64,000 nt of DNA from Klebsormidium nitens (GCA_000708835.1 DF236981.1:248001-312000); one strand, 5' to 3'; shown: positions 1,096 through 36,447, numbered from the stretch's first letter. Numbers and translations are program-made. Notes: a model not told the origin generated them from the sequence alone.

Positions 1096-4000
1096 CTAAG
1101 CGTGGGCGATCCCGTTTGCTTTTGCCTTGCTCGGGCCTCCCGGACTCCGCGACTCAATTGCTTTTATGAATGCCGTCGAGTCGGCAATCGCCCCGAAGAC
1201 GCCTCCCTGCATCTTGATCATGTTGTGAGCCGCCAAGTGGTTGGCAGGGTCGGTTGCCCCGGTGCAGTCCGTCAATAAAAGGCACTCGTAGCTGCACAGA
1301 AAGGGTGACTCGGTCGGTGAGGTCAAGCTTCTTACGAGGGCATAAGCAGCGTACTACTTTCCTCAGTGTACGCAAGCGTCCATCAAACGAAAACGAAATA
1401 ACAAAGAAACGAGATTCCATGCGCCGAACGAGCCGCCGGAAAAAGGTTGCCGTGAATTCCGATGGGATGGCACGAGTCTGCCTCGTATCTCTGATTGGAT
1501 GGTAAACCTCCAGGTCAGACGCTCACAGAAAGGGCAGTCCTCGCAAGTCGCTTGCAGCAAAACATCAACGAAACGCACGTGATTGATTGCGGTAGAAAGC
1601 AGGGCCGTCAATGCAGAAGATGTTACAAAAGTCATTCATATAGGAAAAAAGGGTTCATCCGCGAAAATTCACAAAGAAACCCAAATGCTGGCCGATATGT
1701 TTAAAAACCTTGACGCTACTTGACGCAATCTTCTGAGACACGGACCTTATACGCCTGATCTGGCCAAAACGCGTCTTTGGCAACGGACGCTTTGCTGCAG
1801 TCCACCGACTTAAGAGTGAACTTCCACGATCCAAGAAGCCGGTGCCTTCTATGGTTAGTTTCGGTAACGGTTCCTAAGACTGATGTGAACGGATCGAAGC
1901 AAAGTCCACTCACCCCCGGTCGTTGGCGTCGCGCATCGTGGTGTGGACGCAGACGTCGGTAGTGATTCCTGCCAGCACGATGTTCTGGATCTTGGCGAGC
2001 CGCATCAGCATGTCCAGATCGGTCGCGTAGAACGAGCCCTGCGGAGGACGCGCCCCTCGTTACGGTTTTGAACAAACGTGCATAGTCAGTTCCTCTGTTG
2101 GATCTCACAACTAGGCTGTGTTTGTTTGCCGCGCCTATTCAGATTTGCAAAGTGGCTACAATTCAAGATCTGGATCTTTTCAATAGTGTACCAGTCTGTG
2201 CGCTCTGTCGACTCGGCAGATTGTCTCCGCAGCGGCGACGTTGAAATGGCTAGATGGCGGTCCTCCGCTTTGACGTTTTTGATTGATTCATTCCAGAGGG
2301 TTACAGAATGTCGAATCGACTGGACTTGAACCTTCAACTTCACGTTGGTCACAAGGTGTCAGTTCACACCAGAGAGGCGTCATCTGGTATTCAGGACTTC
2401 GGCCAACCGCTTCCCGTCCGTGGCTTTCAGCGTTGCATCGACGCCGACTCAAGAGGCAGATGTCACGTTCTTTCTACAACGGGTAACAAAAGCACGCCAA
2501 CTAGATGAAAGCAGAAGCCACCGCCGACCCTCCTCTCAGAAAACCCCACTCACCTTCCCCGGCTTCTCAATGATTGGCTCTCCTTCCAGGGGGTACAGCT
2601 CCGGGATGATGTCCCAGCCGGGCTCCCCCCTGGTAAGGATTCTGCCGCAAGGCCCCTTGGAACCAATCCCCGCTCCGATCTGCTCCGATCGCCAACGCTT
2701 GTTCTGGGGCAGGTCCGCGAGATCCGGCCGGTGGCCCTCCCGGGTGTGGAACACGTGGTACCCGAGTTTGCGACACGCGTCCAGCACCGATTTGATGGGC
2801 TTGATGGGCGCCTGGAGGGGAGATCCGGGCATTAGCAACACATCAAGCAAGCTGGGGGGTATTCATGCGAGGCCGACGTAACCGAGAAACGCAACCAGGG
2901 TGAGGCGCGCTTCCGGGAGTCGATCTGCGTGATCGAACTGAACCTTGTTTAGTGGATACACACAGACCCTAAGGCAACATGCGCACTTTTCGCCGAACGC
3001 CTGAAGGACAGAGCAGATGACTTGGACCTTGCCAAAGCAATGTACATTGAAAAGTCACACCTTGTTAGTGAGTAGGATCTTCGAGACAGCGTCTGAGGCT
3101 CATTGTCAAAGCGATGCAGCTTAACGGGCTTTCAAGGACAGACCTGGGTAAGCGAGAGATCGTAGCCCATCTGATCGACGTAGCCGCCCTTTCCGCAGAA
3201 GTCGACCTGCATGTCGATGATGATGAACACCTGCAAGGAGCGAGGGGGAACATATCAGCAGATGACACGTCAGATCTTGCTCTCTGCGCTGTCGAGGGCT
3301 GTCACAATCCTCTAAAGGCGGCCACTCGTTCCCTGTGAGTGTAATTAGTCAAACTTACAGGACTTCGAGGGTGCTTCTCAAGAAGGAGAGAACGCAGGGC
3401 TCTGTCTGACCAAGAAAACGAACACCGTTGAGAGCATCCTTAGAACGGTCGTTGCAACCGTTGAGACAACGAAGCTTCTGAGGAGGAGACCGATCTGTCT
3501 TGCACGTCTGATGATTAACTCGACAAGGGTGGAATGCGTAAAGATACCCGAAAATGCCTAAAGAAGACGACCAATCTTGCTCTTTGTGTTTCACCATTGT
3601 GATTGACCCCACTGGATCCGATTCCTATCCTTCTACTTGCGCTTTTTCCGAATACAGGTCAACCTCAGCGATTGAAAGCACAGGCATTGTACGTGAACTC
3701 ATAAGCACGGAGGAGGCTGCCACAAGTCTGAAGAAATCTAAACACGAAGGCCGGCCCTTTTTGCTGAGAGCTTTTCCCTTCAGTTGCGACTTAGGGGTAA
3801 AGACTGACCGTATTATCGGGTCGCAGGTCTCCGTTCCAGGGCCACTTGTAAGGCTCTGCGTCCACTTGGAGAGGGGCCGGCAATGGCTTCCCAACCCCTC
3901 CAGCAGTGTATGCCCGCCATCCGCCATATGAGGTGATGTCTTTCTGGCCCTGCAAGAACACGTGGATGTAACAAACCGCTTTAAGATGCAAAGAGCAAGG

Positions 4001-5475
4001 TTCAGCATGGCATCAAGATACATCATATGGTCCTGGCAAACTTTGCAAGTGCCAGAGCTAAGCAGCATTTGAGAAAGGACTCACTGCACGCACCGGCCTG
4101 CAAATAAACTCATGATTGACACCCCAAGGCACTACCCCTTAACAGGCAACGTCTCTCAGGGGCCGCGCTTGGTCTATGGATTCTTCAGGGGCAGTTGAGC
4201 AAAGCATACCTCCGTCAAGAAAGGCTCTGCAAGAACCCCCAAGATCTCGTCCCCGCCAGCTAGCACCACTTTGCCAATGCTGAGGCCAGCAGGCTCCTTT
4301 GTGAGTATGGACACCAACCCCTCCGCAGGGACGTCCCACACCTGGAATGACTTCATCACTTTAGGGCTGAGCACCGGCGTGCTGGTAGCTGGGCCATTAA
4401 TAGCGCAACCAGAAGCATGCTCTTTCTCCTGCATTAGTTTTGCTGGTGTGTGAGTTAGCAGGACCTTTTATGATCAAGTACTGCAGCATTGAATTACTGC
4501 GGGCTGCCAAAAGGACTATCGAGGAGCTAAGTTGTAGAGCGCTCTGAACAACTGGAGTCAGAAAACATTCTTCATTGCTTGTCCGAGCCCAAACAACCTA
4601 CAGCACAGCAGCCCTTTGCTACACTGGGTACGAAACAGCATGTTTCTTTTTCTCATCGGAAGCGATATCCACAATTTCTGAGGGAGAGACAACAGAAGAG
4701 ACAGCATACCTTACCTCCAAAGCAACTGAAGCTCCAGACTCATCTTTGCCAACTCTAACCATTCCTGGATGCTTGTCATTGATCGAGAAGATGCGGTACT
4801 GGGGAGCAGTGCTGTCTTCCCTGAAGGAGAAATATGCGGACTAACTGTGAGATGTGCCTTATCGATCAAGCATGGCAGTACCTGTGAGAAGATGTATCAA
4901 ACACACAAGCCAGCTGTTCAACCCTGCAATTGCTGCTGACTTGGCAATTGGTAATGTGACAATGATCAAAGTTAAGCTTCAGTCACAAAGCATCTTTGTG
5001 ATGCTGGGAAAGAAACTTTTGAACACTCGCAGGTTAGGCGGGCCGCTGACCTGAATATCCATGTCATTCGTCATGGAGTCATGCAAGAAAACTTGGTTCA
5101 AAGGAACTGTCCTTCACAGCTTGGAGGTGTAATGCATAGTTACCCTGTTACCAGAACTGCTGAGAAAGATAAGAGGGCAAGAGATGTAATAAAGCAGAGA
5201 AAAATAGACTCCAATCTAGGCGGCTGATCCTGAGAAGCTCTGCAGACAGTAGATGGCTGAGGCTCAATCTGTTTCTCTACAAGCTGGCAAATGACCTTTC
5301 TGGCATCAAAAGAGACCATTGCACAATCATCTTTTGTGATATTGGAGTCCCACTGATGAATCAAGGAGGAGAATCTGTGAACTTACCGCACAAATTGTGC
5401 TTTGGCAGCTACCATGTTTGGATTCAATTCTAGCCCCCTCATAAGGGTGCCATTGACAGCCAAGAGAACGCTCAT
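1096..5475 (-). CDS. biuH: Fusion of an N-terminal GGCT-like (allophanate hydrolase C-terminal-like) domain and a biuret hydrolase (isochorismatase-like cysteine hydrolase); 8 exons, 377 aa
   Basis: Exons 5475-5387, 4820-4715, 4341-4210, 3949-3809, 3230-3144, 2811-2554, 2038-1914, 1291-1096. All introns are GT-AG, phases are consistent, total 1134 nt. N-domain: [73 protein letters not shown]-domain: [99 protein letters not shown]. This is colinear with Rhizobium BiuH as I recall it, and the Asp-Lys-Cys triad is intact. An additional upstream exon cannot be excluded. Confidence 0.9.
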
Positions 5476-8417
5476 CTTGCCAGGCTCCTTGCGGTGGAGA
5501 AGTAAGTATTGACCTGGGCAGGGAAAGGAAGTGCTTTCGTGAGTCGTCTGTACTCCTAAATGTAGGGTTGGCGTCATTGTGTGTCACGGGTAGGAGCTTT
5601 TAAGAGATATCTGTTGCGGGGCCAATGAGAGTCACCGATCTTTGCATGCTTCCCTTCCCGCCCTCCAAAGCACACATTCTGCAGAGTCCATAACAGGCAA
5701 TGCAGGCCAGCATTGCTGGCATAGGCTCTGAGTAACACTGTTTTTCATTTGAGTTACATTAAGATTGAGAATTAGCAGTCATTCACCATAATCTAGCAGT
5801 CAATCAGCAGCATCCGACTCCTACCAAGACACGTGAGTTTCATGTTTGACTCCAGCAGTTCAAAAGATCTGGACTTGAAAGCTCTTGAACTAATCAAAGC
5901 CCATCTGACTGGAGACCAAAGGCAGTGTGTGAAGGTGGCTTACTGACTAGTGAGTTAGGCGTGTTGACTTATGAATTTAGTCTCTCGTTCAAGCCTGAAG
6001 TCAGCAAATCCCAAAGAGAAGCATTGACTCTGTCCAGTTCCTGACTTTTGGGGAGGTCAGCAGCATTGAAAACCTTGCAAGGCACCATAAATTCAGCTTG
6101 TGGCAGCTCTCAATGCCCAAACAAATGCTGATGCCTTCAGTTGCTGCTCCATCTTGGCCAGCAGCGTGGCAGATGACCCGAGGAGCATTGCTTGCACATT
6201 ACACCCAGAGCACTAGTACAAGCGAAGGTTTGTCAGAAATGAATACATATCTACGCCTGCATTCTATTCACCAGCTTACCTGGCTCCAAGATTGTTGGTC
6301 ACACTTTATGCCTCACAAAATACGATCTGCAGCATTGAGGCCAAGAATTGTAGTGCTCTGTGAGCTTGACCAGACAAGCCACGCCTGAGCTTTGCCCCTG
6401 TTGCAGTCAGAAGAACAGATCTCTGACTTGGCTTGCAAGCGCAAGAACTCTTTTGGATTCTAATTTCTACTGTCGTTACAACGGAATACTAATAGCTTCT
6501 AGTACAGTGCCTTGCGAGAAAGACCTGTGTAGTGTGCACCATGAGATTGTACCTAAATTCCTGCACCATGCTTCGGCCTTGCAAGTTGCAGCTTCCGCTC
6601 CACAAAGCTGAGTCGATTTTGCCATTGGGCAGGCCTGTGTAAAGCTCCCTTTGAGTAATCATTCCGGGATCCGGTGTCATGATTCCGGCCTTCGAGTAAT
6701 CATTTCAGTTTTTGCAGATAATGTCGCGTCATGATGACGAGTTCAACCACCATGAGGTCCACGTGCACCATGTGGCACATAGGAGTTCTATGGGCTCGAG
6801 TCCATCAGGTTCCGGAGTCCATCAGTGCAGCGAGCGCGAGCGACTTGACTCGGATCGGACGGTTTTTTTGAACGTTGCTTCCAATCTATGCAACTTGCTA
6901 AAGTGCAGCAGTAGCTGAGGGACGTATGCATGCTGCGTGTCCTTTTTGAGTTTTGACTCACTGGCCTCACTGCAGAACAGAGGTGAAGAGGAAATTGTGT
7001 GGCAGCATTCGTAGCCACATACTCATTGGTCACGATATTTTATATGCAGCGGTCGACAAATGAGAAAATGACGCTTCTCAGCTTCCTAGAAATTTCAATT
7101 GACGTCTGGACTGGATACCTCGCCGCACAACACCATGCTGTAGGATGCTTGCAATCCAAATTTTTCAGCACATGGCTCGAACATTTGTGCCGGTCCTTCA
7201 ATCATTCGTTGCAAATCTTCGAGCTTTCGGAAAGGCAAGGAAAAAAGCTGATCTATGTCTCGCTCGCAGCTCCTGATCAGCTTAACCACTGACGTTGAGG
7301 CGGCTGCTTTCTACTGTAGAAGAGTCATTGTAGAGATAGCCTTATTGCAAGATGCACTAAAATTAATCATGCATGCACTTTCTCGCAAGAACATGCCGAC
7401 GGTAGGACCCGGTCAAGATACTGAGATAGTTGATGAGAGTCGGAGGGGTTACAATGTTGGCGCTTGCGCATGTTTCTGCATGAATGTCAGCTTGTCCTTT
7501 TTACCCAATCCGGATCACTATGGTTTGCTGACTATTGTGAGAAAAACGTACATCGATCAATTATCCACCGAGACTCATGCTGCACCTCGGAGTTATTCAT
7601 CCGTTGTATTCTGATACCCGCCAGGTCGGACAGCAACTCAAAGCCGGTGGCTCAATTGACGTGGCTTAGGGTTTCATGCAAAAGATTCATCACAGAAGGA
7701 CCCAACATGTTTAACGTATGCCGATGTCGCATGTGCTGTTTATGCAAAACATCTGAAAGGCCAGTCAGCCTGACTTACACCTTAGTTGACGTTGCCATGG
7801 CCAATGTCCAGCAAAACGGACAAATTCGACGCCACCCTGGAGGGTTGCTTGGCTTAACAATTTGCATCCATATGGAACGCTTCGAAGTACTTGCGAAGCA
7901 ATTCAATTGTTAAATACTGTTAAAGCGGGGAATGTTCGACTTGTCATAGTACCATAGGTAGCAAGCCTGTCTTTGCCTACCATGTTTTCTCTTGAAGCCA
8001 AGGACTGGATGGCTTGCACGTTCTACTTATTATCTACTTACATAAGCTTCGCATACTTCAACCTCCTAACGTTCAATATACAGTCGCGCTCAGACTGACC
8101 TGTGAGTCGACGCCTTAGATAAATACCTCAGAAGTTCTTGCGTGACTTACAGGTTCGTTGTGTAGGAGAGGCTGAAGGAGTAACCACTGCGCGCGACTCG
8201 CTTCGCGCCTTGTCTCCCGATAAGGACAAGCGAAACCAAGCAAGTGACGGCTATTTCACCTGCCTAGCATGCAACACGGGGACTTTCCAAAGAGTTCTGC
8301 ACATCGACCCTTGTACCAGCGCCCCCCCGACCATATTTGTACACCAGATCCCCCTTCTTTTTACTTAACCGAGCTAGTAGTCGAGGCGCATTCCTCTTGG
8401 GTCAATCGTCTCCGGCT

Positions 8418-11400
8418 TCAGACCTTCGGAGGAGGGGACGGGGGCTGCTTGGCGACATCGGACTCGGTGGTCGGCAGGGTGTCGTCGCCCATTTCCATCT
8501 TCATGGACCGCGATGCCTGCACGTGCAGGTAGTTGGTGGCCCAGCTGCCGCCTGCAAAGATCATCAAAGTAGAGCCAGGTCAGGATAAGAGTGTCATGAG
8601 GAACCGCACCAAGTCTTCACCGATCGTTGTCCGGACAGATATGGGCCCGCAGATATGGGCCCGCAGTAAGGATCACACATGAGAACGGGTGAAACGTGCC
8701 TTGACAGATACAAAGCACAAGCTATTCAAATTATTGCCCGGGTTGCCAGTCTATAAACAGTTCCCAAGTTGCAAACCTTTGAAGCGAGAGCCGTCGCAAT
8801 AAGCCCGAGGCATTCACGCAGCTTCAGAAAGTTCCGCACCACAATGGAAAGTACAGGACAGAGCCACAGAAACAAGGGGCTCACCAGGCCACGTCTTCTG
8901 CCACGGGTGCAGCTGGAACGTCACCAACTTGATGATGATCCAAGCGCCAAACCCGGCGATGGCACCATACGCGATGTTGGACGTGAACGGCTGGACGATG
9001 ATGGTGAGGAAGGCGGGGATGGCCTCCGTCAGATCCTTCCACTCAATCTCTGCGAGACGAAAGCGTTCGAGAGGTTCAGGTCTGCCGCGAGGCTCTGCGG
9101 ATCACATGACGTCAGCAGCCAAACTCGAGCGCAGACAGGCCGTGTTTGAGCAACGAGATGCACATGCGCTACTTGTACGAGTTCAATAGAAGGCTTCGAA
9201 TGTGCTTGGTGACCATTTATATTCCAACCAAGCGGGCAGCATGGCCCCTGCGATTGACCGTGGAATCGACAATCCGGAACACGAGCAATACCTGGTTGTC
9301 AGATCAGACCTCAGTTGCAAGAGCAGACCAGACGACCAAGGTAGTCAGCGGATCAATCAAATCAATCAATAGCAACAGTATCAGCGGACCTCGCCCTTCT
9401 CGGTCTTGGCAAGATCAAAGAAGCCCACTTATTGCCAAAAACAGAATCGCAATGATTCGCGGCTCACCAATGATCGACTCGTTGAAGATGAGCACGCCGA
9501 TCAGCACCAGGATGGGGCCCGTCGCGATGTTCGGGATCGCCGTGAAGATGGGCGACAGGAAGCACATGAGGAAGAAGAGCACGGAGCAGAAGCACGCGCA
9601 GAGGCCCGTGCGGCCGCCTTCCTTGACGGCGGCCGCGGACTCGACGTATGTCGTCAGGCATGACGTCCCCAGGATGCCGCCCATGACGGTGCCGAGGCCG
9701 TCCGCCAGGAAACCCTTGTTGGAGTTGGGGATGTCGCCGTTCTCGTCGATGATGTCCATCATGGTGCCCATGGAGTAGAAGGTGATGCACGCGCCGATGA
9801 AGTCGAGGTACAGGAACGTGACGAAGGCTGCGAGGGGGCGGAAGAACTACCGTCGTTAGTCAAACCTGGTTAGCGACTGAACAGTTGCCCTTCTATCCAC
9901 AAAACGTGGTTCGTGTCTGGTTGATCGCCCGCAACAGAGCGTGGTTGAGAGGTAAAACCGCCTGGGAGGGGCCGGCAGAAGATGCCATCAAGAGGCTGCT
10001 CGGAAAGACGGGCAGCACGGGGCCGCGAATCTTAGTGGACTGCAGAGAGATAAGCTGAATTGAGGTTATCGGAAGTTGTGAAGGAAAGCAAGCAACCTCC
10101 TAACGTGTGCCTCCCTAAGTTCGTAGAAACCGAGATGCAGCATGGGAAGGAAGATGCACTTTGTTCTGAACAAAAGGATCAAGGACTGTGAAAGTACGGC
10201 TTAAGTCCGTGGGGTTCCGAGAAACTATAAAAGCGAGGAATACGACTAGGGGCGTAGGAAGCAGCGCCAGTGAAGGACCAGAGGAGGCCCGCTGCGAGTT
10301 ACAAGCACGGATTGTACAAAGTTCGGATTCAACAGGTTGTGAGGTAACCTAGTGATGGTGAGAATACTCTTTAGAGAGATAGTCGGGCCGAACTATCACT
10401 TGACGATAGAGACGGGTTTGGAACGTGACTAAGGCCACTGGGAAAGCACGGGGGAAGGTATTGCACAAACGAACGTGCGATGGGGCGCCGAAATGGCGAA
10501 CAACACGGCTTGAGAAGAATCGTTTAACTGGAGTCAATGGCTCTCAATACAGATGATGGTCAGCTGCTCCATAGCAGTGGTACTGTTTGATTCGATGGCA
10601 GCCAAACAGTGGTGCACGCTTCCAGGTTTTCCAACTCTTTTGTCGAATTTCGAGGTTTTGTAGTTGCGGCTTAGATTATTCCCAGTCCCGCCCTGCACGG
10701 TTTAGGTTCTGTAACATTGCGGGTGACTGAGCGCCTCACCAGAGATCAGCTTCCCGGAGTCGCTTCCCCACGCGAAGCTGATGTTGCCAGCAGTCTCCTG
10801 GAAGGTCGGCGCATCAACTGCCTTCTGGGGGGCTGTGTCCGTCCACTTAATCCAGCTGATGAAAGTGGTAAAGAGGATACCTGCATGAGTTCAAAGTTAA
10901 CATGGTGAGCACTCGGTTTCTTTTGCCGCTCGGTCTCTTGTTTCAACCAAAATCCCCACAATCTGTGAGATAGGGTTGTTGTGTTAGAGCAAGAGCCTCG
11001 TGAAGAACTACTTTTATTGCCATCCTGAAAAGAAGCCTATTGACTCCGTTCTTATGCATGGGCTACATCCAATCGGAAGGATGCGAGTTTTAAACGCCTA
11101 CCGTTCAGAAGTATGAGAAACAAGAAGCAAGAGTATCATCATGTGTGACGTAGGCTAGGAGCTTGAATGTTACGGCAGGACGAATGTCCTTTTCAGCAGA
11201 AGTTATCACAGTGGAGTAACAAACACTACACTGAGAAGTGAGCGGGATCTTAGAAGCGTACCTATGAGGAGGGAACCGTTGAGGTGGTAGACTGTGAGGA
11301 TAGCGGTCAGGGTCAGCCCCGCCATAGAGAGCCAGGGGCAGGTGGGGCCGTTGCTGGGGTCGTTGTAGCAGCGATTGAATTGCTTATTGAGCTGGACCAG

Positions 11401-14096: not shown

Positions 14097-15021
14097 GTTT
14101 GCTGGTGGAAGGTCCTCTCGACAAAGATCTATTCAGGCCGACGGGAGATGCGCGGAGCGCGATGCGGTGCGGTTGCTCTGAAACAGGAGATTCTCACTGC
14201 CAGATGTTTTATGCTCAATTGCGGGGAGAATCGACGTCCAGACAATGTTTCAAGAAAAGTGCAAAAGCAGCTCTGAAGGTTCTGGTTCTTATGTATTGCC
14301 GGAGCGTCAATGGAGAAATGATGGAAAATCACTTCTCTGCCATCATTACGTAAAAGGAGAATGATGCTGCAAGTACATATGTTCTGCAGATACCTACATT
14401 TTCTCATCAGTGTTCTCTACAGGCTGCTGACTCCCTGCAGTGTTTTTCACTTCAATGAGCAGTCTGCATACCGTATGTGACCAGCCAGCTCCTTTTCTCA
14501 GCCTTAAGCCTGCGAGGGATGTCTTAATCAGGCTCACGGGGATATTCTGACTACTGACATAACCCTAAGGTTAACGCAGAACGCCACAAGCGTGCTAGTT
14601 GCAAATTCTGGTTAAACCGTTAAACCGCTAGCCTGAGCGGCCGGTAGGGATAGCTGCTAGCACGATTCCGTGGCTGGGAGATCGGCTCACGAGTCACGAG
14701 TCACGAGTCGCTTGAACTTGAAGTTTTCTCGGCCTCAAACCGGACTTCGGCCAAAAGCTCGGCGACGAAGTCTCATTCTCCACGTGGCAAAACAAAATTG
14801 CGTTCGACCAATCAAGATGGCGGAAATGTCGTACCGGTTACGAACAAGTGGCGAAAGTGAGCGCCGACTCAGGATTGGTTGAACGGCCTGACAAGCAATC
14901 ATCACACTGCGATGCGGCGCCATTTTGTAATGATCACACGACTCCTTGAGTTTATTCTGCTTCAAGTAGGGTCTACAAATGTTGGGAAAATACCCCCCTA
15001 AAGAGATTGATTCTTTCATCC

Positions 15022-15474
15022 AATGATGAGCTTGTGCAGCGGCGAAATGATGGCCCGGATCCTTGCAACAGGTTCCTATTTGGAAGGGGGGAAGCCCACC
15101 ACTCCACGATCGAGCGCCAAAGAGCCAAGCAGTCCCCTGGCAAGAGAGAGGACCTTCCACCAATGATGAGCAGGGTAAGGGTACAAGCGGCCAGCCTGTC
15201 GAACGGATGGTACGGAGGCGGTCAGCTCGGAAGATAAGGTTGCAGAACCGCCACACTTCCAGACTGGGGGCGTTTTTCAAATCAGATTCATGCCCCCTGT
15301 TGACCCTCCTTCTGCGGATGATAAGCTTGTGCTGCGGCGCAATGATGGTACGGACGGCTCTCCATTTTTGAATCAAGTGGGGGCATGGCCAGTGCAGCTC
15401 TTGGGCCCCCTTGCTAGAGTTCTGGTTGGCTGCCAATGATAAGCTTGTGCTGCGGCGAAATGATGGTACGGATG
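15022..15474. repeat. Three dispersed direct repeats of about 35 bp between the triuret-hydrolase-like gene and the permease
   Basis: atgat(g/a)agcttgtgc(a/t)gcggcg(a/c)aatgatgg at about 15022, 15318 and 15436. Confidence 0.7.
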
Positions 15475-16655
15475 CAGCATTTTACCGGTAGCAAGAAGCT
15501 TGTGACCCTACCGGTCGAAGCAACGCCCCCACTTGGCCAGATTAGGCCCGGGCTTTGCAGCGCATCTGGAGGCCCTGAATGCCCTCCGACCCTTGCATCG
15601 AAACTCGAAGGTTCTCGCCGGTCACAAAACTTGCTTATTCATCAGGAATGTTTCATGCAGATTGCATGGGAGCTATGAATCAAGTGAACAGTGGCCGTGT
15701 AAACCATATAGGATTAGCTATACTAAAGAAGTGTTGGCGTTTCTCTTCTTCATCAATCATGGCATGGTTAGAACTTTTGATGACCAACTTACCAAGCGGT
15801 TCGAGCAATGAATCTCCCAGCACATATTGCTTGCCCATGTCCTATATCGGCTACTCCCGCGGCACACATAGCTTGCTGACAAATTGTGTTTCAAGGAGAA
15901 GCAATCATGTTCACACATATGCGATCTTCAGCACGTTATTCAAGCCTAGCAATCTGGACTCAGTGACGTCGACCACTTCGCACGTCGAGTTCGTGCATGA
16001 ACAGTACATTTGTATAAGCTGTGTGAATGCATGTGTTGCCGGACATCATATCAAAATACAAGCCTACAATTGGGCGTGGCCTGTGTATAGAAATGATACG
16101 AAGAAGTTCGCACGAATTGCTGCTTGCTTAGTGCAGTCTTGACAAGATGTTGCTATATACGTGTGGTCAATCGGTTATTCTGCTTAATTACCGTCCTCAA
16201 GAAATGTCATGATATATAAATGTTCTACCAATCAACTCCTTGACCTTAGTCTACCTTAGTTCAACCCTCGTTCAAAACGTAACAAGCACTGACGGCGTGA
16301 CGCAACTGCTCCGAATAAATGAGGTACAACAACCGTGATAGTCTTCACTGCTGAGATCAATTGGCGATAATTTGCAGTATCCAAGCAGTTGTTGTTACCC
16401 ACAAACGTATTCCATGATAATTGCCTTGGTGGTGGGCCCTCTATCCACACTCCACTAGAGGTTGCATAACATATATACACTATCGTTCTTCTATCCGAAG
16501 CTGGACTCTCGATCCTTCATACTATCAAGTATACGGTAGCAAAGGCCCAGGCCAGCGGTTCGAGGCAGCCAGGCTTTTGCTAACCGTTCCTAGATGCCAG
16601 CCCTTCCTAACGAATAAATCAATGTAAAGCTGAACGGCCCGGCTAGGCCCCGCCT

Positions 16656-19600
16656 TTAGGAAGTTGTGCCGTTGGCGTGAGTCTCCTTGCTAGCCAGCAG
16701 CGCATCTCGGACTTCTTGGGCAGACGCAGTCCAGCCCACAATCGCCCCCTGACTCGCGAGGATCTCCAGCGTGGAGCTCTTGAACCTGCGGGACGGCGAA
16801 CAACTTTGACTCAGTGAATAAAGAAAAACGGTTTAGGATGGCGGACAGGTCTCAAGGTCCGAAAGGCTGGCCGGCCTTGAAAAGCGTCAATCTGTACCGG
16901 AAAAACCTTAACTTAATGTAAGCTTGTCTCGGCAATCGCACTTTGTCAGCCCCCAATATGAGTCGATCATGTTCACCCAATCTGAATGATCATGCAGAAG
17001 GAGGGAAACTTGAAAAAGTCGTTGAAACCTCACTCAGGAAAGTAGCTCTCCGTTGCGTCTGTCACCATGAGGCACTCGAAGCCCCGGTCGCAGGCCTCGC
17101 GCATCGTGGTCTGGACGCACACCTCGGTTGTCACCCCCCCGAACAGCAGGTGGGTCACGCCCTTGGACCTGCAAAGAGACACGAACGGAGAGTACTGAAT
17201 GCTGAGCCGATTTGTGATTTTCTCCCAACTCGAGTCGGATCGAGCAGTTGATATGGGTTCGGAAGTGTTTAGGGACCAGAAGATACGCGTCGAAGATTGG
17301 CCAATCGAAGAGAACGGCAAGCTTATAGTTGGATACGCCCGCCCGAACTCGCGAGTGCACGACAATTGGATGCTCCGTAACGCGCCTGACCATTCGTACT
17401 GCTGATCGTAGTCTCCGTTGTTGACGCTCTTAACCATGCGCCAGCTTACAAGCCAACAGCTGAACGGCGTGAAGGGTGGACAGCCATGCAATAAAGTGTG
17501 ACGAAAAACGCGGACGCTCCACTCTGAGCGACGACACATGTGAATACCTTTTAGTAAGTTTCAGATTCGACATGGAGGAAGGAAGCCAGATTGAGTGCTC
17601 GAGGCTCGACAAGAGGTGAAGCACAACTTACAGAAGAAACTCGTAGATGTCGGTCTGGTAGAAAGCGCCTTTTCCGGGCTTGTGGATAGCCTACAGGTAA
17701 GGAGACTCCGAGTCAGCCTCCGGGCACGAGCGGCAGATAAAGCATTGAGGCTCGCTGTGGGCGCTTTGGAATGAATGCCGAAGCAAGTTGCAAAGAAACA
17801 GCAGTGATCGCAGATGTGACAGAGAGCTAGCAAGGGACTTAGAGCTTTTATACGAGTCCCACGTGTTTCAACTCCGACGAGGCCGACAGGTTTGAAAGGC
17901 ACGTCACTTCCCTGGATGTCTGCATCTGCCCGGCCCGGTAGAGAATCACGACTGATCTTTTCAATCCTTTGGGTCAGCTGTCCATATGATCGAATCACGA
18001 GCATTTGCTCCCCAGATTCACGGAGTCAAGTACCATGATTGAGACGCAAACTGCGAAGCCATACCTTCTCGTTAGGGGCCGGCGCGTTCTCGTCGACGAT
18101 GCCGTTCCCTTCCTCATTTCGGACGAGGATGCGGCCGCCAATCTCGCCCTGCGTTGCCAAGAGCAGGCACGACTCAGGTCCCGGTTCCAAGCAAGATTTC
18201 GTAACATTCCCTCAAGGCAAATTGAGTGTTGCTGAAAGAAGGAAGCACACGCAGCTGAGTTCCCAGATCCAAAAGCTCTTTTTTTCCTAAACAAGACGAC
18301 AGTGGTCTGAAATCGAGAAGCAGGACTCAACGCAGATCAACCGCCGGAACATCCCCGCGCTGGTTGACAAAGAGAGGTAGCATTGCCGCAGACACGTGCC
18401 GCTCCCAATCACGTCACGCTTACGACCGCTTCCAGACACACCACACCTTCGCGTATGAACCTCCCAATGTAGAGATTGCAACCACTCCATAAGGAGAGAC
18501 AGACGCTTTGTGATTGCGCCAAAAGAGTCTACAAAGAGCGGACGGGTCACCTCATCTCCGATCCGGAGCCCGACCGGCAGCTGCCCTCGGGTGAGCTTGG
18601 CCAGCGGGGCGTCGCTCAGGTCCGGATAATGCGCCTCCAGAGTGTGGACGATGGGCATGCCGAACTCGCGAAACGTATCCTGCAGGCAAAGATATTGAAG
18701 TGAGAGTTGGATCTTGACGCGGAAAGCAACATAGAAAGTCCGAAAAACCTAGTCTGGGAGCGGAGTACTTAGGTCCCGGGTGGTGCGCCTCTAGAGTGTG
18801 GGACGATCGGCATGCCGAACTCGCAAAACGTATCCTGTGAGCAAAGAATTTGTGGATCCTTTACCTCTGAGGCAAGAACCAAACCTAGAGGTCAGCAAAA
18901 GTCTACTCTACCGCAGCTGTATATGCTTGATGGCGGCTTCAGGATCGAGTACCCAATCCGCTGTCAAGCGGACCGCCGAAGAGATTAGGAACAGGAACGA
19001 GAGTGCGTCTGAAGAGGGTTGTGGTGCGCTATTGCGGTCCTGGCAAAGGCAAGACACCCCGTCGCTTGAAAAGACGTCAGACGAGAATGGGAACAGAGCT
19101 GAGACTTGCGCTCTCCTCGCAAGGCCCATCTGAATGTATCGAAGTGCAACATCTGGTTAGCGGTGCATTAGCGAAGCGAACACGACAAGATTCGAGCAGG
19201 AGAAGACTTCAGCCTTCGATTAGGTAAAGCGAAGCGGGTGTTTGATAGTAGCACACCGAAGATCCTTCGGAGGGTCGAGCAACTGACGCACGAGCAGCAA
19301 GGACGATGGAGCCTCAATTCAGGTTAAGAATGGCGGGTACAGATCAACAGCGAACCGGCCCGCATGGAGGGTCCACTCACCAGGAGTCGGCAAGCATACC
19401 TTTAGCGTCAGAAGATGTAGACGAAAGCGGAAGGATGTCCGCAAAAAAGTAACTAGCATGGGCGTCCGCTCACCAGGATCATTCGTACGGTAGGCACGAT
19501 GGCTTGCAGCAGCTTGACGTTGTTGCCCAGCGTAGACCCAAAGCCGCCCTCCTCCACAAAGTCCCTTTGCATGTCGATCATCACCAGCGCGGTCGCCTCA

Positions 19601-22600
19601 ACCTAGAAAGACACACCGATGATGATCAGTGAGCGACTTGTGAATCGGTGCGATTGTCGCTGGCGTTTTCGCCTCCACCTGAAGAGACACACCTATGGTT
19701 AGCAGTCCGCATCTTCGATAGTCGGTGAGAGTAAGACTGTGGCAAAGTCTTCGCTCGAACAAGCCACAAGCATACAGCGCGGTCAGTACCTGGAGGTGAA
19801 GAGACTTACGCAACGTTCAAGGCTGCAGGCTTTCGTGCGACTAGGGCAGGGGCCTTAAGAGCGCAGTTGTCAGTCTGGTCATGTATATTCAATCGAGACG
19901 AGACTAGCAAGAGGTCAGCGTTTCAGCAGGGCAAACAAACATCATAAGCGGACGTCAGACTCTTGGACGAATTTCATCGTGACTCGAAGCTCATTGCGCA
20001 TGTTTCAAGCTCAAAGAAGCGCTTGGTACACAATGACTTGACGCATCCAGCTACGCTGCTCCAGCTATACTTACTGGGAACGTGAACGGCCAAGGCTTGG
20101 CTCCCTCCACGGTCGCTCTCTTCATGTTTTCGTAGTTGGCCGGCAGCGGCACAACGGCCGGAACCAGAGGGTCCGGCTTTCCGATCCAGGGGACCTTCGC
20201 CCACGCCTCGTCGACCGGTTCCGGCGGGCCAGCGGATTCCGGGCTGGAGAGGCCGGAAAGAACGGCATCCAAGCTGGCGACCCAGCCGATGATCCCGCCC
20301 TGGGCCGTGATCTGAGTCAGCGACGCCGCCTTGAAGCTGCAAGAGGAACTCCAGAAGAAGCGGAAGTTAGACGCGGCATCCATCCGTTTCCGCTGAAGTA
20401 GAGTCGTTCCGCCAAAACTGCTGCTTCTGGACGTGAAAGGTGATGTGCAGCTTGAACCTGATGAAAGCGCGAGGGGTTCAACGGAAGCCGGTCCGAAGGG
20501 TCCGCCTTCGGTGAAGAGTAGGAAGCGGGCAGTTGCAGCAGGAACAAAACAAAAGGTGCATGAAGCAGCTCTGTCTTGGTCTTTGTACATTTGAGATCCC
20601 TGCTGAATCGAGATGCCTTGAGTTGCCAGCTTTTATAGGCAAGAAACCAGGTGACAAGACGACAGACAGTATCACAAGCCGACCAGGAAGAGGATGTCGC
20701 ATGCATAGTCGAGGTTTCGAAGCTACTAGCGCCCCAAATCGCACCGCAGACCTCAGCAGCCTGTTCATCTAGTTCGTTCACTTTTTCAGACTCAGCAAAG
20801 TCGTTCGGTAAGAGCTGTATAAAATAATGGAGAACGCTGCTGCTTACTCGGGGTTGTAGCTAGCGGTGCACTCGTCAACTAGGAGCGGGTCGAAGCCGCG
20901 GTCGTTGAGCTCGCGCATGACGATCTGGACCGTGATGTCGGTCTCCAGTCCGGCGACCAGCACATAGCGGATTTCCTCCTTGACCAGGAATTCGTGAACG
21001 TCTGTGGCGTGGCCGATGCCCTTGCCGGGAGTGTAGACAATCTGCCATAGGAGATGGGAAACTTAAGGGGGGGAAGGAGAAATACGTATGGATGTTGGGT
21101 TGGATGAGAAGAAAGACCTGTGGCTGTCAGATATGGCTGATGCCATTGCCGAAAGTGAAAAGACACCTCTGAAAAGACATGGAAAGAATGGGAGGAGAAG
21201 AAAGACAGTTCTGGATTTCTGCTTTGCAAGCGGAGTGCTATTTGAAGAAGAATGATTGGCAAGGTGGATAAGTGAAGACAAAATGGGAGAGACTGACAAC
21301 CAACCATGGTCGGTCTCCGATTTGAGGACAGCAGCCTTCCGTGATGCGATGAACTGATAGAATCTAGACTTACTCACTCACACAAGGCCTCAGCAGATTG
21401 TGTGTCCAAGTTTGAGAAGACGGATGAAATGAAGGGAATCCAGTCACATAAAAGAGGGATGGTGGGAAGCAAGAAGCAAACAAGTCGTTCAAAGGATAGA
21501 CACACGAACGTTAGAAGAGTGGGGTCAGTAACAGGGTAATCGTGCAAGCCTTAAACACGTTGGGTTTTGAAAATCTGGAAATGGAAGCCAGGTTTTAACT
21601 CCCATGGTGCCTTTAGGACCAGCAGGGCAGTCTAAGAGAGCCTTCAAAGCTCTCCCCCAACTAAACCAGAAAAATGGTCCTTGCCAGAAAACCTCCGCGC
21701 ACAGAGTAACATTTGACAAGGGGACCTACCTTCTCTCCATCTAGGGGGGCCGCATCATCGACGAACTGCGTGCCAATCTCCCCCTGAATCAGGATGCGCC
21801 CCCCTTGGGAGCCCTGCACAGAAGAGGCTGGTTTTAAAGAAAGATCCACCAACAAGCATTCGCTCAACCAGCAAGAAGAACGCTTACCAGTAGCTTCAAA
21901 GTTGATGGCACATTCTTTTCAGAAGCTCACACTGCTAGCAATTGCGGAGGCAGATCTGTACCACCCCTGAGCCCTCACTTAAGTAGGTGCGTTGTTTGCG
22001 TGACTGCAGAAGGATCATGGCAGCAGATGACTGTGCTCTCACCTCATCCCCAATGCCGACTCCGCCAGTCTGCTTCTTGGTCTTGCTGGCCTTGGAAGGG
22101 GCCAGGTCACTCAGGTCTGGCTTGTATGCTTCTGCCACATGGACCACGGTCAGCTTTGCCTCTCTGGCTGCTTCCTGCAGAAGATTCTGTGCAAATGGTT
22201 CTGACATTGATGCTGAGTGGTTTGGAGCTCTTGATTGCAATTGACCAGTCCCATTTGGCCGTCAAGAAGAGGGAAGTGGCTTGAGTTGATCATAAGAGAT
22301 GGCTTCTTTTGTGGTCAAATAGAAGCCACTATCAACAAAGATAATGCAGCTGAACGGAACACAGGAGACTATTTGGCAGGTAAGATATAGCATAACAAAT
22401 TATGAGCCAGGTTTCATGGCACACTCACCAGGAGTTTGGCGACTTCTGGCCTGATAGATTGCACTTTTGAAAGGTCGTTCCCAAGTAGTTCCGCATAGCC
22501 CCCGGGCTCCAAGAAGTCGTGCTGCAGCTTCAGCAGCAGAAGGGCAGTTTTGCCAACCTGCATTTGATCCCCCAGATCAGCTTGGAAGTCATTCTTAAGA

Positions 22601-22878
22601 AAAGGAAACCACCAGACAGAGGAGAGCTTTAGACGGATCCGCTGGCCTACTGGCAGCACCTTGTACTGCTCTCAAAGGTTGATACAGGTGCTTAGCTCAG
22701 GTCTTGCCTTGAATTCTACCTGCCTCCAAATGTTGATTGCACAAAGCGCAGTCCCCAAGCAGCTGGGGTCAACACAGATTCTTCTATAGTGGAGATGACA
22801 CATCTGGGGCTGGGAGTGACTGATGATGCTTACTGGCGACTTGAAGTCTCGTGGCTGTGCTTTGATGACATACTCCAT
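16656..22878 (-). CDS. trtA: Tandem two-domain triuret-hydrolase (TrtA)-like cysteine hydrolase: degenerate N-terminal domain plus intact C-terminal domain; 12 coding exons, about 503 aa
   Basis: Exons 22878-22834, 22557-22429, 22174-22043, 21813-21730, 21041-20848, 20336-20075, 19602-19474, 18679-18551, 18148-18065, 17690-17632, 17168-17034, 16785-16656 (1512 nt, in phase). Domain 2: [93 protein letters not shown]. The GGFG..LGN and TEVCVQ signatures match TrtA rather than BiuH, as recalled. A splice acceptor at 22894 means the true start may lie in an upstream exon. Confidence 0.82.
18771..18846 (-). repeat. Degenerate intronic copy of the acceptor and 5' part of trtA-like exon 18679-18551
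   Basis: gcgcctctagagtgtgggacgatcggcatgccgaactcgcaaaacgtatcctgtgagcaaag versus the exon gcgcctccagagtgtggacgatgggcatgccgaactcgcgaaacgtatcctgcaggcaaag. The copy has a 1-nt insertion. Confidence 0.8.

Positions 22879-29648: not shown

Positions 29649-36447
<6,799 letters not shown>

What the first reader, a model, noticed from the sequence alone, without database searches (positions are those of the whole stretch)
1096..22878. Operon-like eukaryotic gene cluster for triuret/biuret nitrogen salvage (TrtA-like, AZG permease, GGCT-BiuH)
Seen: three consecutive intron-containing genes on the same strand, about 2.6 and 2.9 kb apart, encoding a TrtA-type hydrolase, a nucleobase-type permease and a BiuH-type hydrolase. 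Known: in bacteria TrtA deaminates triuret to carboxybiuret, which loses CO2 to give biuret. BiuH converts biuret to allophanate plus NH3. Triuret can form by oxidative breakdown of urate, and the bacterial genes are often clustered. Inference: this is a physically clustered uptake-and-catabolism pathway that lets an alga release ammonia from purine-oxidation products or urea-condensation compounds. I am not aware of such a cluster being described in a streptophyte alga.
Basis: partly seen in the sequence, partly recalled or inferred. Interest (0 to 1): 0.92.

Follow-up and report, generated by a model that had tools for sequence, protein, structure and literature searches.

The report
Conserved algal triuret/biuret salvage gene cluster
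Three neighbouring genes of the streptophyte alga Klebsormidium nitens encode a triuret-hydrolase-type enzyme, a purine-permease-like transporter and a biuret hydrolase, and the enzyme–transporter pairing recurs in distant green algae, which suggests an old, undescribed eukaryotic nitrogen-salvage cluster.

Summary
The window is Klebsormidium nitens scaffold DF236981.1. Three consecutive minus-strand, GT-AG-spliced genes lie 2.6 and 2.9 kb apart.

- **Gene A (16656-24375):** one transcript encodes two isochorismatase-like domains. Domain 2 keeps the Asp/Lys/Cys triad and all six residues that distinguish TrtA from BiuH. It scores 250 bits to the TrtA structure and 151-163 bits to BiuH structures. 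Domain 1 is a TrtA-derived pseudo-enzyme (Lys/Thr/Thr at the triad).
- **Gene B (8418-14096):** a permease of an algal-only AZG-like clade with a changed TM3 substrate motif.
- **Gene C (1096-5475):** a BiuH orthologue (NCBIfam equivalog 404 bits, cut-off 370). Its N-terminal domain is the allophanate-hydrolase C-terminal domain (Pfam AH_C), a more precise label than "GGCT".

The hydrolase–permease linkage also occurs in Chlamydomonas, Monoraphidium and Nannochloris. By gene names and coordinates it occurs in Spirogloea and Chlorokybus too. It is absent in two other genomes checked.

Function is inferred; no activity or co-regulation was tested. The genes have separate transcripts, so "operon-like" is only a figure of speech. 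TrtA/BiuH homologues in phytoplankton are mentioned in the literature; I found no description of the conserved cluster, the fusions or the pseudo-domain. Other first-stage notes of this scan cover the same three genes one by one.

The parts
16656..24375 (-). Gene A: two-domain isochorismatase-like protein (annotated P0153, 537 aa). CDS exons run from 23194-23268 down to 16656-16785, plus a small annotated 5' exon near 24375. An alternative start ATG lies at 22878.
   Evidence: RNA contig joints and a single 2.56 kb contig; splice sites; ORF; 100% identity to P0153; exon map; annotation
20249..22863 (-). Gene A domain 1: TrtA-derived pseudo-enzyme domain. Triad positions read Lys (codon 22528-22530), Thr (21030-21032), Thr (20931-20933). 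Gln202-equivalent is kept (20300-20302).
   Evidence: Signature KFYNETKIEDTYQI and placement in a 5-member clade (support 0.998) inside the TrtA-signature clade; codons
16680..20122 (-). Gene A domain 2: TrtA-type active domain. Asp (19573-19575), Lys (17679-17681), Cys (17117-17119), Gln202-equivalent (16749-16751).
   Evidence: 250 bits / E 6e-73 to TrtA 6xix against 151-163 bits to BiuH structures; full TrtA signature DFFNEKKATECYQI; codons
8418..14096 (-). Gene B: AZG-like NCS2 permease (annotated P0292, 510 aa, 9 exons).
   Evidence: Pfam Xan_ur_permease 104.5 bits; best PDB match AtAZG1, 234 bits; algal-only clade, support 1.0, with TM3 motif SVQLGTN; exon map
1096..5475 (-). Gene C: AH_C–BiuH fusion, 8 exons: 5475(5577)-5387, 4820-4715, 4341-4210, 3949-3809, 3230-3144, 2811-2554, 2038-1914, 1291-1096. 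The annotated model P0392 starts later, at 5415.
   Evidence: Spliced model against homologue P0003; annotation; transcribed in RNA runs
3902..5475 (-). Gene C N-terminal domain: allophanate-hydrolase C-terminal-like domain (Pfam AH_C).
   Evidence: Four exon pieces cover AH_C profile positions 2-123; 107 bits on P0392; best PDB match the stand-alone 137-aa protein 5c5z, E 1.7e-32
1096..3859 (-). Gene C BiuH domain: Asp (3213-3215), Lys (2563-2565), Cys (1949-1951), Gln215-equivalent (1207-1209).
   Evidence: The alignment printed shows about 80% identity of the central exon to Rhizobium BiuH 6azn (E 2e-47); NCBIfam BiuH equivalog 403.9 bits against cut-off 370; BiuH signature DFYYEKKSTDCTQV

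Best explanation
This is a three-gene eukaryotic catabolic cluster for oligo-ureides (triuret and biuret).

Proposed sequence of events, all inferred from homology except where noted:
1. The AZG-like permease (gene B) brings the substrate, or a closely related planar N-rich compound, into the cell.
2. The active second domain of gene A hydrolyses triuret to carboxybiuret plus ammonia.
3. Carboxybiuret loses CO2, either spontaneously or helped by the AH_C domain.
4. The BiuH domain of gene C hydrolyses biuret to allophanate plus ammonia.
5. Allophanate is then broken down, possibly with the help of the fused AH_C domain, by decarboxylation to urea or by handling of N-carboxy intermediates.

The first domain of gene A is a catalytically dead TrtA copy. 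It most likely stands in for the second subunit of the TrtA dimer and supplies the Gln202-type residue that completes the partner's active site.

Shown by sequence and transcripts: gene structures, transcription, family and subfamily membership, signature residues, conserved linkage. Inferred: substrates, order of steps, role of AH_C, role of the pseudo-domain, substrate of the permease.
For: TrtA assignment: domain 2 aligns to Herbaspirillum TrtA over chain positions 9-215 at 249.6 bits, against 151-163 bits for BiuH structures. It keeps D24, F29, E72, K129, K132, C162 and Q202, and all six TrtA-versus-BiuH discriminating positions F35, N41, A134, E160, Y187, I205 named in PMC7948467.

BiuH assignment: 403.9 bits to NCBIfam NF050097 (cut-off 370); about 80% identity of the main exon to characterised Rhizobium BiuH, read off the alignment; BiuH-type residues at all six positions. 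In a tree of 184 domains nearly all BiuH-clade and TrtA-clade domains carry one of these two signatures; a few basal or divergent domains deviate.

Linkage: permease next to the BiuH/TrtA gene in C. reinhardtii (head to head), Monoraphidium minutum (head to head) and Nannochloris (one gene between). By coordinates or gene numbers also in Spirogloea scaffold s67, Chlorokybus Chrsp14 and an unnamed EukProt species. All linked permeases fall in one algal clade (support 1.0).

Pseudo-dimer idea: the AlphaFold2 model of the whole protein has pLDDT 90.7 and pTM 0.89, with a confident linker. Q202, I205, Y187 and N41 are kept in all five pseudo-domains, while D24, K129 and C162 are lost in all five. 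The TrtA active site is completed by Q202 of the other subunit.

AH_C link: 30 of 80 bacterial stand-alone AH_C genes have a BiuH/TrtA-family gene within 8 kb. One cyanobacterial operon reads AH_C – CN_hydrolase – BiuH – ABC ATPase – TrtA.
Against: No enzyme, transport or growth assay exists for any algal member. The permease keeps several purine-binding residues of AtAZG1 (Y62, D390, E444, aromatic 442), so it may simply carry purines. Co-regulation could not be tested; both enzyme genes merely appear in the same RNA studies. The linkage is absent in Myrmecia bisecta and Diacronema lutheri, and contig lengths suggest it is absent in Symbiochloris. The carboxybiuret decarboxylase known from bacteria, TrtB, is treed with AtzH and HpxZ in PMC12625717, Fig. 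S11, so it appears to belong to another family than AH_C, and the AH_C role is open. I could not find out whether K. nitens has an allophanate hydrolase or urease. Whether the modelled domain interface equals the TrtA dimer interface could not be checked, because no coordinates are available.
Confidence: 0.65

Rival explanations
1. A purine-uptake cluster: the permease imports ordinary purines (adenine, guanine, hypoxanthine or urate). The two hydrolases clean up non-enzymatic oxidation products of urate made inside the cell, rather than catabolise imported triuret or biuret.
For: Best structural relatives are the purine/cytokinin carriers AtAZG1 and AtAZG2. Y62, D390, E444 and an aromatic residue at 442 are kept. 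Triuret is a known product of urate oxidation (PMC7948467).
Against: The clade has a fixed change in the TM3 substrate motif (APGMGLN to S[VT]QLGTN) and loses the D393-equivalent, which argues for a changed substrate. A preprint reports that some charophytes keep a separate plant-type AZG besides this AZG-like form.
Confidence: 0.2
2. The hydrolases act on other ureido or carbamoyl compounds (for example guanylurea, formylurea or ureidoacrylate-like substrates), so the triuret/biuret labels do not carry over to algae.
For: The family contains GuuH and RutB (PMC12625717). A BiuH at 67% identity is a generalist. The two-domain and AH_C architectures are not those of the characterised enzymes.
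Against: All substrate-contacting and discriminating residues are identical to the characterised enzymes. RutB scores are far lower: 81-135 bits against a cut-off of 378.
Confidence: 0.1
3. The adjacency has no functional meaning: it is inherited ancestral synteny or chance.
For: Genes are separately transcribed. Linkage is absent in some algae. Gene order and orientation differ between lineages.
Against: The same two families are neighbours in at least four sequenced genomes spanning chlorophytes and streptophytes, and in three more by coordinates, despite rearranged order. Bacteria also join trtA/biuH with nucleobase-type transporters.
Confidence: 0.05

Closest known systems
Bacterial triuret/biuret operon trtA–(trtB)–biuH–atzF (Herbaspirillum sp. 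BH-1, Rhizobium leguminosarum; PMC7948467)
   Same: Paralogous TrtA-type and BiuH-type cysteine hydrolases encoded side by side. Triad and discriminating residues are identical. The bacterial clusters are often joined to nucleobase- or nucleoside-type transporters (PMC12625717).
   Different: These are eukaryotic, intron-rich, separately transcribed genes. No AtzF or TrtB lies in the cluster. TrtA is a pseudo-domain plus active-domain tandem. BiuH carries an AH_C domain. The transporter is an AZG-like NCS2 secondary carrier, not an ABC system or CodB.
BiuH–TrtA fusion proteins of chlorophytes and other algae (e.g. C. reinhardtii CHLRE_10g448500, P0002)
   Same: Same two enzyme types and the same linked AZG-like permease.
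   Different: There, one polypeptide carries active BiuH and active TrtA. In Klebsormidium, Spirogloea and three unnamed transcriptome species the BiuH is separate and fused to AH_C, and the TrtA gene has a duplicated, inactivated TrtA domain in front.
Arabidopsis AZG1/AZG2 and fungal AzgA purine (cytokinin) permeases
   Same: Same fold family, with TM1 Tyr, TM8 Asp and the TM10 T-[YF]-[VI]-E-S motif.
   Different: A separate algal clade (support 1.0) with TM3 S[VT]QLGTN instead of APGMGLN, Gly for the D393-equivalent, and an extra Cys-containing loop after TM3. Substrate unknown.
Allophanate hydrolase C-terminal domain and the stand-alone bacterial AH_C protein (PDB 5c5z)
   Same: Pfam AH_C. 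The alignment printed shows roughly 60% identity to 5c5z, and one search gives 56-63% to the stand-alone bacterial genes, which often lie beside biuH/trtA.
   Different: Here it is fused to the N-terminus of BiuH with no amidase domain. Similarity to the C-domains of true allophanate hydrolases is much weaker: 31-56 bits against 115 bits.
Algal nitrogen-assimilation gene clusters (nitrate cluster, DUR1/DUR2/DUR3 urea cluster of Chlamydomonas; from my own knowledge, not checked here)
   Same: A transporter and catabolic enzymes for one nitrogen source, encoded side by side in a eukaryote.
   Different: A different substrate class. This cluster has not been described in the papers I could search.

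Membership tests
BiuH (biuret amidohydrolase, EC 3.5.1.84) | Isochorismatase-like fold with Asp-Lys-Cys triad | tested here: met
   Pfam PF00857 143.6 bits; D, K and C present at codons 3213-3215, 2563-2565, 1949-1951
BiuH (biuret amidohydrolase, EC 3.5.1.84) | Score above the curated equivalog cut-off | tested here: met
   NF050097: 403.9 bits against cut-off 370 on annotated P0392
BiuH (biuret amidohydrolase, EC 3.5.1.84) | BiuH-type residues at the positions that discriminate it from TrtA (Tyr, Tyr, Ser, Asp, Thr; Gln215) | tested here: met
   Signature DFYYEKKSTDCTQV, identical to bacterial proteins named BiuH; positions taken from PMC7948467
BiuH (biuret amidohydrolase, EC 3.5.1.84) | Hydrolysis of biuret to allophanate and ammonia | not testable with these tools
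   Needs an enzyme assay
TrtA (triuret hydrolase) | Asp24-Lys129-Cys162 triad, plus F29, E72, K132, Q202 | tested here: met
   All present in domain 2 (alignment to 6xix). Not met in domain 1 (Lys/Thr/Thr at the triad).
TrtA (triuret hydrolase) | TrtA-specific residues F35, N41, A134, E160, Y187, I205 | tested here: met
   All six identical in domain 2
TrtA (triuret hydrolase) | Closer to characterised TrtA than to BiuH | tested here: met
   249.6 bits against 150.8-163.2 bits; falls in the TrtA-signature clade, support 0.90-0.98; below the BiuH equivalog cut-off as a single domain, 215.7 bits
TrtA (triuret hydrolase) | Homodimer in which each subunit completes the other's active site | tested here: inconclusive
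   The protein is a tandem. The model has pTM 0.89 and domain 1 keeps Q202 and I205, but the interface could not be inspected.
TrtA (triuret hydrolase) | Specific hydrolysis of triuret to carboxybiuret | not testable with these tools
   Needs an enzyme assay
AzgA/AZG purine permeases (NCS2) | NCS2 fold, AZG subfamily | tested here: met
   PF00860 104.5 bits; best PDB hits AtAZG1 (234 bits) and AtAZG2 (191 bits)
AzgA/AZG purine permeases (NCS2) | Conserved substrate-site residues (AtAZG1 Y62, M160 in the APGMG motif, D390, F442, E444) | tested here: inconclusive
   Y62, D390 and E444 are kept, and F442 is Tyr. The APGMG motif is replaced by SVQLG and D393 by Gly, fixed across the algal clade.
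AzgA/AZG purine permeases (NCS2) | Transport of adenine, guanine or hypoxanthine | not testable with these tools
   Needs an uptake assay
Eukaryotic metabolic gene cluster | Adjacent genes for steps of one pathway | tested here: met
   Three consecutive genes with no annotated gene between them. That they serve one pathway is inferred from the bacterial pathway.
Eukaryotic metabolic gene cluster | Linkage kept across species | tested here: met
   loci read; coordinates and gene numbers. Absent.
Eukaryotic metabolic gene cluster | Co-regulation | tested here: inconclusive
   Genes A and C were each found in RNA runs of the same seven studies, and neither in runs of two other studies. No condition-resolved data.
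Operon (polycistronic unit) | One transcript over several genes | tested here: not met
   The gene A RNA contig (2559-2587 nt) extends 648 nt beyond exon 17032-17166. If the last exon is unspliced, it ends near 16138, about 2 kb before gene B.
Allophanate hydrolase (AtzF/DUR2) | Amidase-signature N-domain plus AH_C domain | tested here: not met
   Only AH_C is present; there is no PF01425 amidase.

The most novel reading that the evidence does not exclude
A gene cluster older than the chlorophyte–streptophyte split gives green algae a dedicated route for triuret and biuret. In this reading the AZG-like permease has changed from a purine carrier to an oligo-ureide carrier. The dead TrtA domain is an obligatory built-in partner that completes the single active site. 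The AH_C domain is a new N-carboxy-ureide decarboxylase that replaces TrtB or AtzF. If land plants indeed lack the cluster (not tested here), its loss on the way to land plants would then help explain why biuret in urea fertiliser is toxic to crops.
Probability: 0.3. Interest if true: 0.8.

Novelty: new variant of a known kind. Interest (0 to 1): 0.62.

Why it matters
Triuret and biuret catabolism is known only from bacteria, and the natural source of triuret is unsettled. A conserved, transcribed enzyme-plus-transporter cluster in green algae, from Chlamydomonas to close algal relatives of land plants, would have three consequences.

- It would mean these compounds, or their urate-oxidation precursors, are regular nitrogen sources or waste products for phototrophs.
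- It gives testable candidates in genetically tractable species (C. reinhardtii), for example a first transporter candidate for oligo-ureides.
- It offers eukaryotic genes for making crops tolerant to biuret in urea fertiliser; bacterial BiuH already does this in rice (PMC7700744).

The pseudo-TrtA–TrtA tandem is a clean natural case of a homodimeric enzyme turned into a one-active-site fused heterodimer. The recurrent AH_C association, fused in algae and adjacent in bacteria, points to an unassigned step of the pathway.

Tried and rejected
- Plus-strand reading of the region: rejected. All coding pieces and all splice joints are on the minus strand.
- Gene 1 as 'TrtA-like' in plus-strand order: my first PDB hit showed that the low-coordinate gene is the BiuH.
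- AH_C domain = TrtB (carboxybiuret decarboxylase): rejected as a homology claim. TrtB is treed with AtzH and HpxZ in PMC12625717, Fig. S11. AH_C could still do a similar reaction.
- Bacterial contamination or an unspliced bacterial gene: rejected, given GT-AG introns, RNA contigs and eukaryote-only architectures.
- Domain 1 as a degenerate BiuH left over from the chlorophyte BiuH–TrtA fusion: rejected. It nests within streptophyte TrtA domains.
- The search for related loci with an 11-sequence AH_C alignment failed because no stretch was conserved enough. A 4-sequence alignment worked.
- An AtzF-type amidase was looked for in 80 bacterial AH_C loci: none found.
- Robinson 2018 and Aukema 2020 could not be read; they are not held. 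A search for Cre10.g448500 found nothing relevant.
- P0003 could not be placed on a contig.
- Co-regulation could not be tested: the single read-laying run went to the gene A transcript model.


Full report
**What is there.** The window is a reversed piece of Klebsormidium nitens scaffold DF236981.1 (GCA_000708835.1). The spliced product of the largest gene is 100% identical to an annotated K. nitens protein, and the annotated locus maps exactly onto the window. All coding pieces in 1-24 kb lie on the minus strand.

**Gene A.** RNA-derived contigs from four runs give ten joints, all CT..AC on the plus strand, which is GT..AG on the minus strand. One contig of 2559-2587 nt covers every exon from 17032 to 22894 and runs on at both ends. 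The loose ends place the next exons at 16785 and 23194. The resulting ORF has two isochorismatase-like domains in one polypeptide. It equals annotated P0153, residues 35-537.

**Genes B and C.** Gene B (8418-14096, 9 exons) is annotated P0292. Gene C (8 exons, 1096-5475/5577) was modelled against homologue P0003 with canonical splice sites. It agrees with annotated P0392, except that the annotation starts at an internal Met (5415) and so cuts off the first strand of the N-terminal domain. The gaps are 2.56 and 2.94 kb, and the annotation has no gene between them. The flanking genes (HlyIII family; NmrA family) are on the other strand.

**The enzymes.**
- The central exon of gene C matches the structurally and biochemically characterised Rhizobium BiuH at E 2e-47; the printed alignment shows about 80% identity.
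- The whole annotated gene C protein scores 403.9 bits on the NCBIfam BiuH equivalog model, above its cut-off of 370.
- Domain 2 of gene A aligns to Herbaspirillum TrtA (6xix) at 249.6 bits, E 6e-73. The two BiuH structures score 163 and 151 bits, and RutB scores 74 bits.
- The TrtA paper names the catalytic and substrate-binding residues (D24, F29, E72, K129, K132, C162, Q202). It also names six positions where the TrtA and BiuH consensus differ (F35, N41, A134, E160, Y187, I205).
- In the alignment (chain index = residue number + 3), every one of these is the TrtA residue in domain 2.
- I split 184 domains from the search hits and read these 14 columns. Nearly all domains in the two main clades carry one of two signatures: DFYYEKKSTDCTQV (BiuH, including proteins NCBI names biuret amidohydrolase) and DFFNEKKATECYQI (TrtA). 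A few basal or divergent sequences deviate. Gene C has the first signature and gene A domain 2 has the second.

**The pseudo-domain.** Domain 1 of gene A reads KFYNETKIEDTYQI. The Asp, Lys and Cys of the triad are Lys, Thr and Thr, while Q202, I205, Y187, N41, E72, F29 and K132 remain. The same loss pattern (Lys at D24; Thr/Ser/Ala at K129; Thr/Gly at C162) is found in four relatives: Spirogloea and three transcriptome proteins. The five pseudo-domains form a clade (support 0.998). It sits inside a streptophyte TrtA clade (0.81), inside the eukaryotic TrtA clade (0.98), and apart from BiuH. So domain 1 is a duplicated TrtA domain, not a decayed BiuH.

The pseudo-domains are still conserved: mean pairwise identity is 58%, against 72% for the active domains. 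In TrtA, Q202 of one subunit completes the active site of the other. The AlphaFold2 model of the whole protein is confident throughout, including the linker (pLDDT 90.7, pTM 0.89). I therefore infer an intramolecular pseudo-dimer with one working site. I could not inspect the interface.

**The N-terminal domain of gene C.** Four exon pieces cover positions 2-123 of Pfam AH_C, the allophanate hydrolase C-terminal domain. The annotated protein scores 107 bits on it; Pfam lists no GGACT match for it, and only weak ones (25-27 bits) in two relatives. Its best solved relative is a stand-alone 137-aa bacterial protein (5c5z, E 1.7e-32). That is well ahead of the C-domains of real allophanate hydrolases, at 31-56 bits.

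A genome scan found hundreds of stand-alone bacterial homologues, at 56-63% identity among the 80 kept. Of those 80 loci, 30 have a BiuH/TrtA-family gene within 8 kb, 13 have a BiuH at 71% identity or more, and none has an AtzF-type amidase. One cyanobacterial operon reads AH_C – CN_hydrolase – BiuH – ABC ATPase – TrtA, and six further loci carry the same CN_hydrolase.

The association of AH_C with biuret and triuret hydrolases thus predates the algal fusion. The known carboxybiuret decarboxylase TrtB appears to belong to another family: it is treed with AtzH and HpxZ (PMC12625717, Fig. S11). The step done by AH_C is open. It could be decarboxylation of carboxybiuret before BiuH. It could be decarboxylation of allophanate, or breakdown of N-carboxycarbamate, after it. 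The last role is my recollection of the allophanate hydrolase literature and was not checked here.

**The permease.** Gene B has Pfam Xan_ur_permease, and its best solved relatives are Arabidopsis AZG1 (234 bits) and AZG2. With the intron-less Nannochloris neighbour as query, the top hits are all algal at 374-1208 bits, K. nitens included. Bacterial NCS2 permeases and plant AZG1 follow only at 255 bits or less. In a tree of 116 sequences the algal proteins form a clade of 32 with support 1.0, excluding plant AZG1. This matches a 2026 preprint's 'algal AZG-like' group.

The clade keeps the TM1 Tyr, the TM8 Asp and the TM10 T-Y-V-E-S motif. It replaces the TM3 motif APGMGLN by S[VT]QLGTN and the D393-equivalent by Gly. 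In AZG2 the Met of that motif contacts the purine through its backbone, and its mutation lowers transport. The site is thus partly remodelled in a fixed, clade-wide way. The substrate is unknown.

**Conservation of the linkage.**
- C. reinhardtii: the BiuH–TrtA fusion gene CHLRE_10g448500 lies head to head with a 688-aa permease of this clade.
- Monoraphidium minutum has the same head-to-head arrangement.
- Nannochloris has the permease 2 kb away, with a cupin gene between.
- Spirogloea scaffold s67 has the permease at 310,511-313,684 and an AH_C–BiuH gene at 302,972-306,144.
- Chlorokybus has the permease and two AH_C–BiuH–TrtA genes as models 1830-1832 on Chrsp14. An unnamed EukProt species has them as genes 4113 and 4114.
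- Myrmecia bisecta and Diacronema lutheri have no permease within 10 kb.

Order and orientation differ between lineages, yet the pairing persists. This argues for selection on linkage or for shared regulation, such as a bidirectional promoter in the Chlorophyceae.

**Architecture across lineages.** Chlorophytes, a haptophyte and a pelagophyte have BiuH–TrtA. Chlorokybus has AH_C–BiuH–TrtA, with one copy's TrtA domain inactivated (Asn and Gly at the Asp and Cys positions). Klebsormidium, Spirogloea and three unnamed transcriptome species have AH_C–BiuH plus pseudoTrtA–TrtA.

**What is not shown.** No activity, transport or growth data exist. Gene A has its own transcript, which ends about 2 kb before gene B if the last exon is unspliced, so there is no operon. 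Genes A and C were each found in RNA runs of the same seven studies, and neither in runs of two others. That is not a test of co-regulation. The fate of allophanate in K. nitens is unknown.

**Comparison with the literature.** The bacterial pathway trtA–trtB–biuH–atzF and its clustering are known (PMC7948467), as is its association with nucleoside and cytosine transporters in nitrifiers (PMC12625717). [quoted passage not shown] My searches found nothing on an algal cluster, on the permease link, on the AH_C fusion or on the pseudo-domain. The K. nitens proteins carry only generic names. Two relevant papers could not be read.

**Verdict.** I rate this a new variant of a known kind, with interest 0.62 and confidence 0.65 in the cluster function as stated.

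Noticed in passing
window 5415-5577: The public K. nitens model of gene C (P0392, 357 aa) starts at an internal Met (5415). It lacks the first strand of the AH_C domain ([14 protein letters not shown]), which homologues have. An in-frame ATG at 5475 restores it, and a further one at 5577 would add 34 residues of unknown meaning.
   Followed up: partly
window 29649-34375: An annotated 554-aa gene combines NUDIX-like, Zn-ribbon NUD and NUDIX domains with an Ocnus/Janus domain (Pfam list). Another first-stage note (s1-299585) covers it.
   Followed up: no
L013-L092 (bacterial loci), e.g. L065:7995-12511: Stand-alone AH_C-like genes (about 120-133 aa, relatives of PDB 5c5z) are often next to biuH/trtA. 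In cyanobacteria they sit in an operon AH_C – CN_hydrolase – BiuH – ABC ATPase – TrtA. No AtzF-type amidase was found in any of the 80 loci. This may be an undescribed bacterial variant of the pathway.
   Followed up: partly
proteins P0205-P0260; L009:8957-9754: Many bacterial TrtA-signature proteins are fused to PF11533 (AtzH/TrtB-like) or to cupin domains (PF07883/PF12973). In Nannochloris a cupin gene sits between the permease and the BiuH–TrtA gene.
   Followed up: no
protein P0005 (Chlorokybus Chrsp14S02227): One of two neighbouring AH_C–BiuH–TrtA genes has Asn and Gly at the Asp and Cys of its TrtA domain. By its replacements and its position outside the five-member pseudo-domain clade, this looks like a second, independent loss of catalysis in this family.
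   Followed up: partly
proteins P0154, P0156: Some eukaryotic tandems are TrtA–TrtA with both domains carrying the full active signature. These may be intermediates between the duplication and the pseudo-domain state.
   Followed up: no
window 14738-15481 (-): A 248-codon stop-free stretch lies between genes A and B. It has no Pfam match and neighbouring frames look repeat-like. It is not annotated as a gene.
   Followed up: partly
window 42000-50000: A stretch with high G+C (0.54-0.61) and strong negative GC and AT skew (GC skew down to -0.31), unlike the rest of the window.
   Followed up: no
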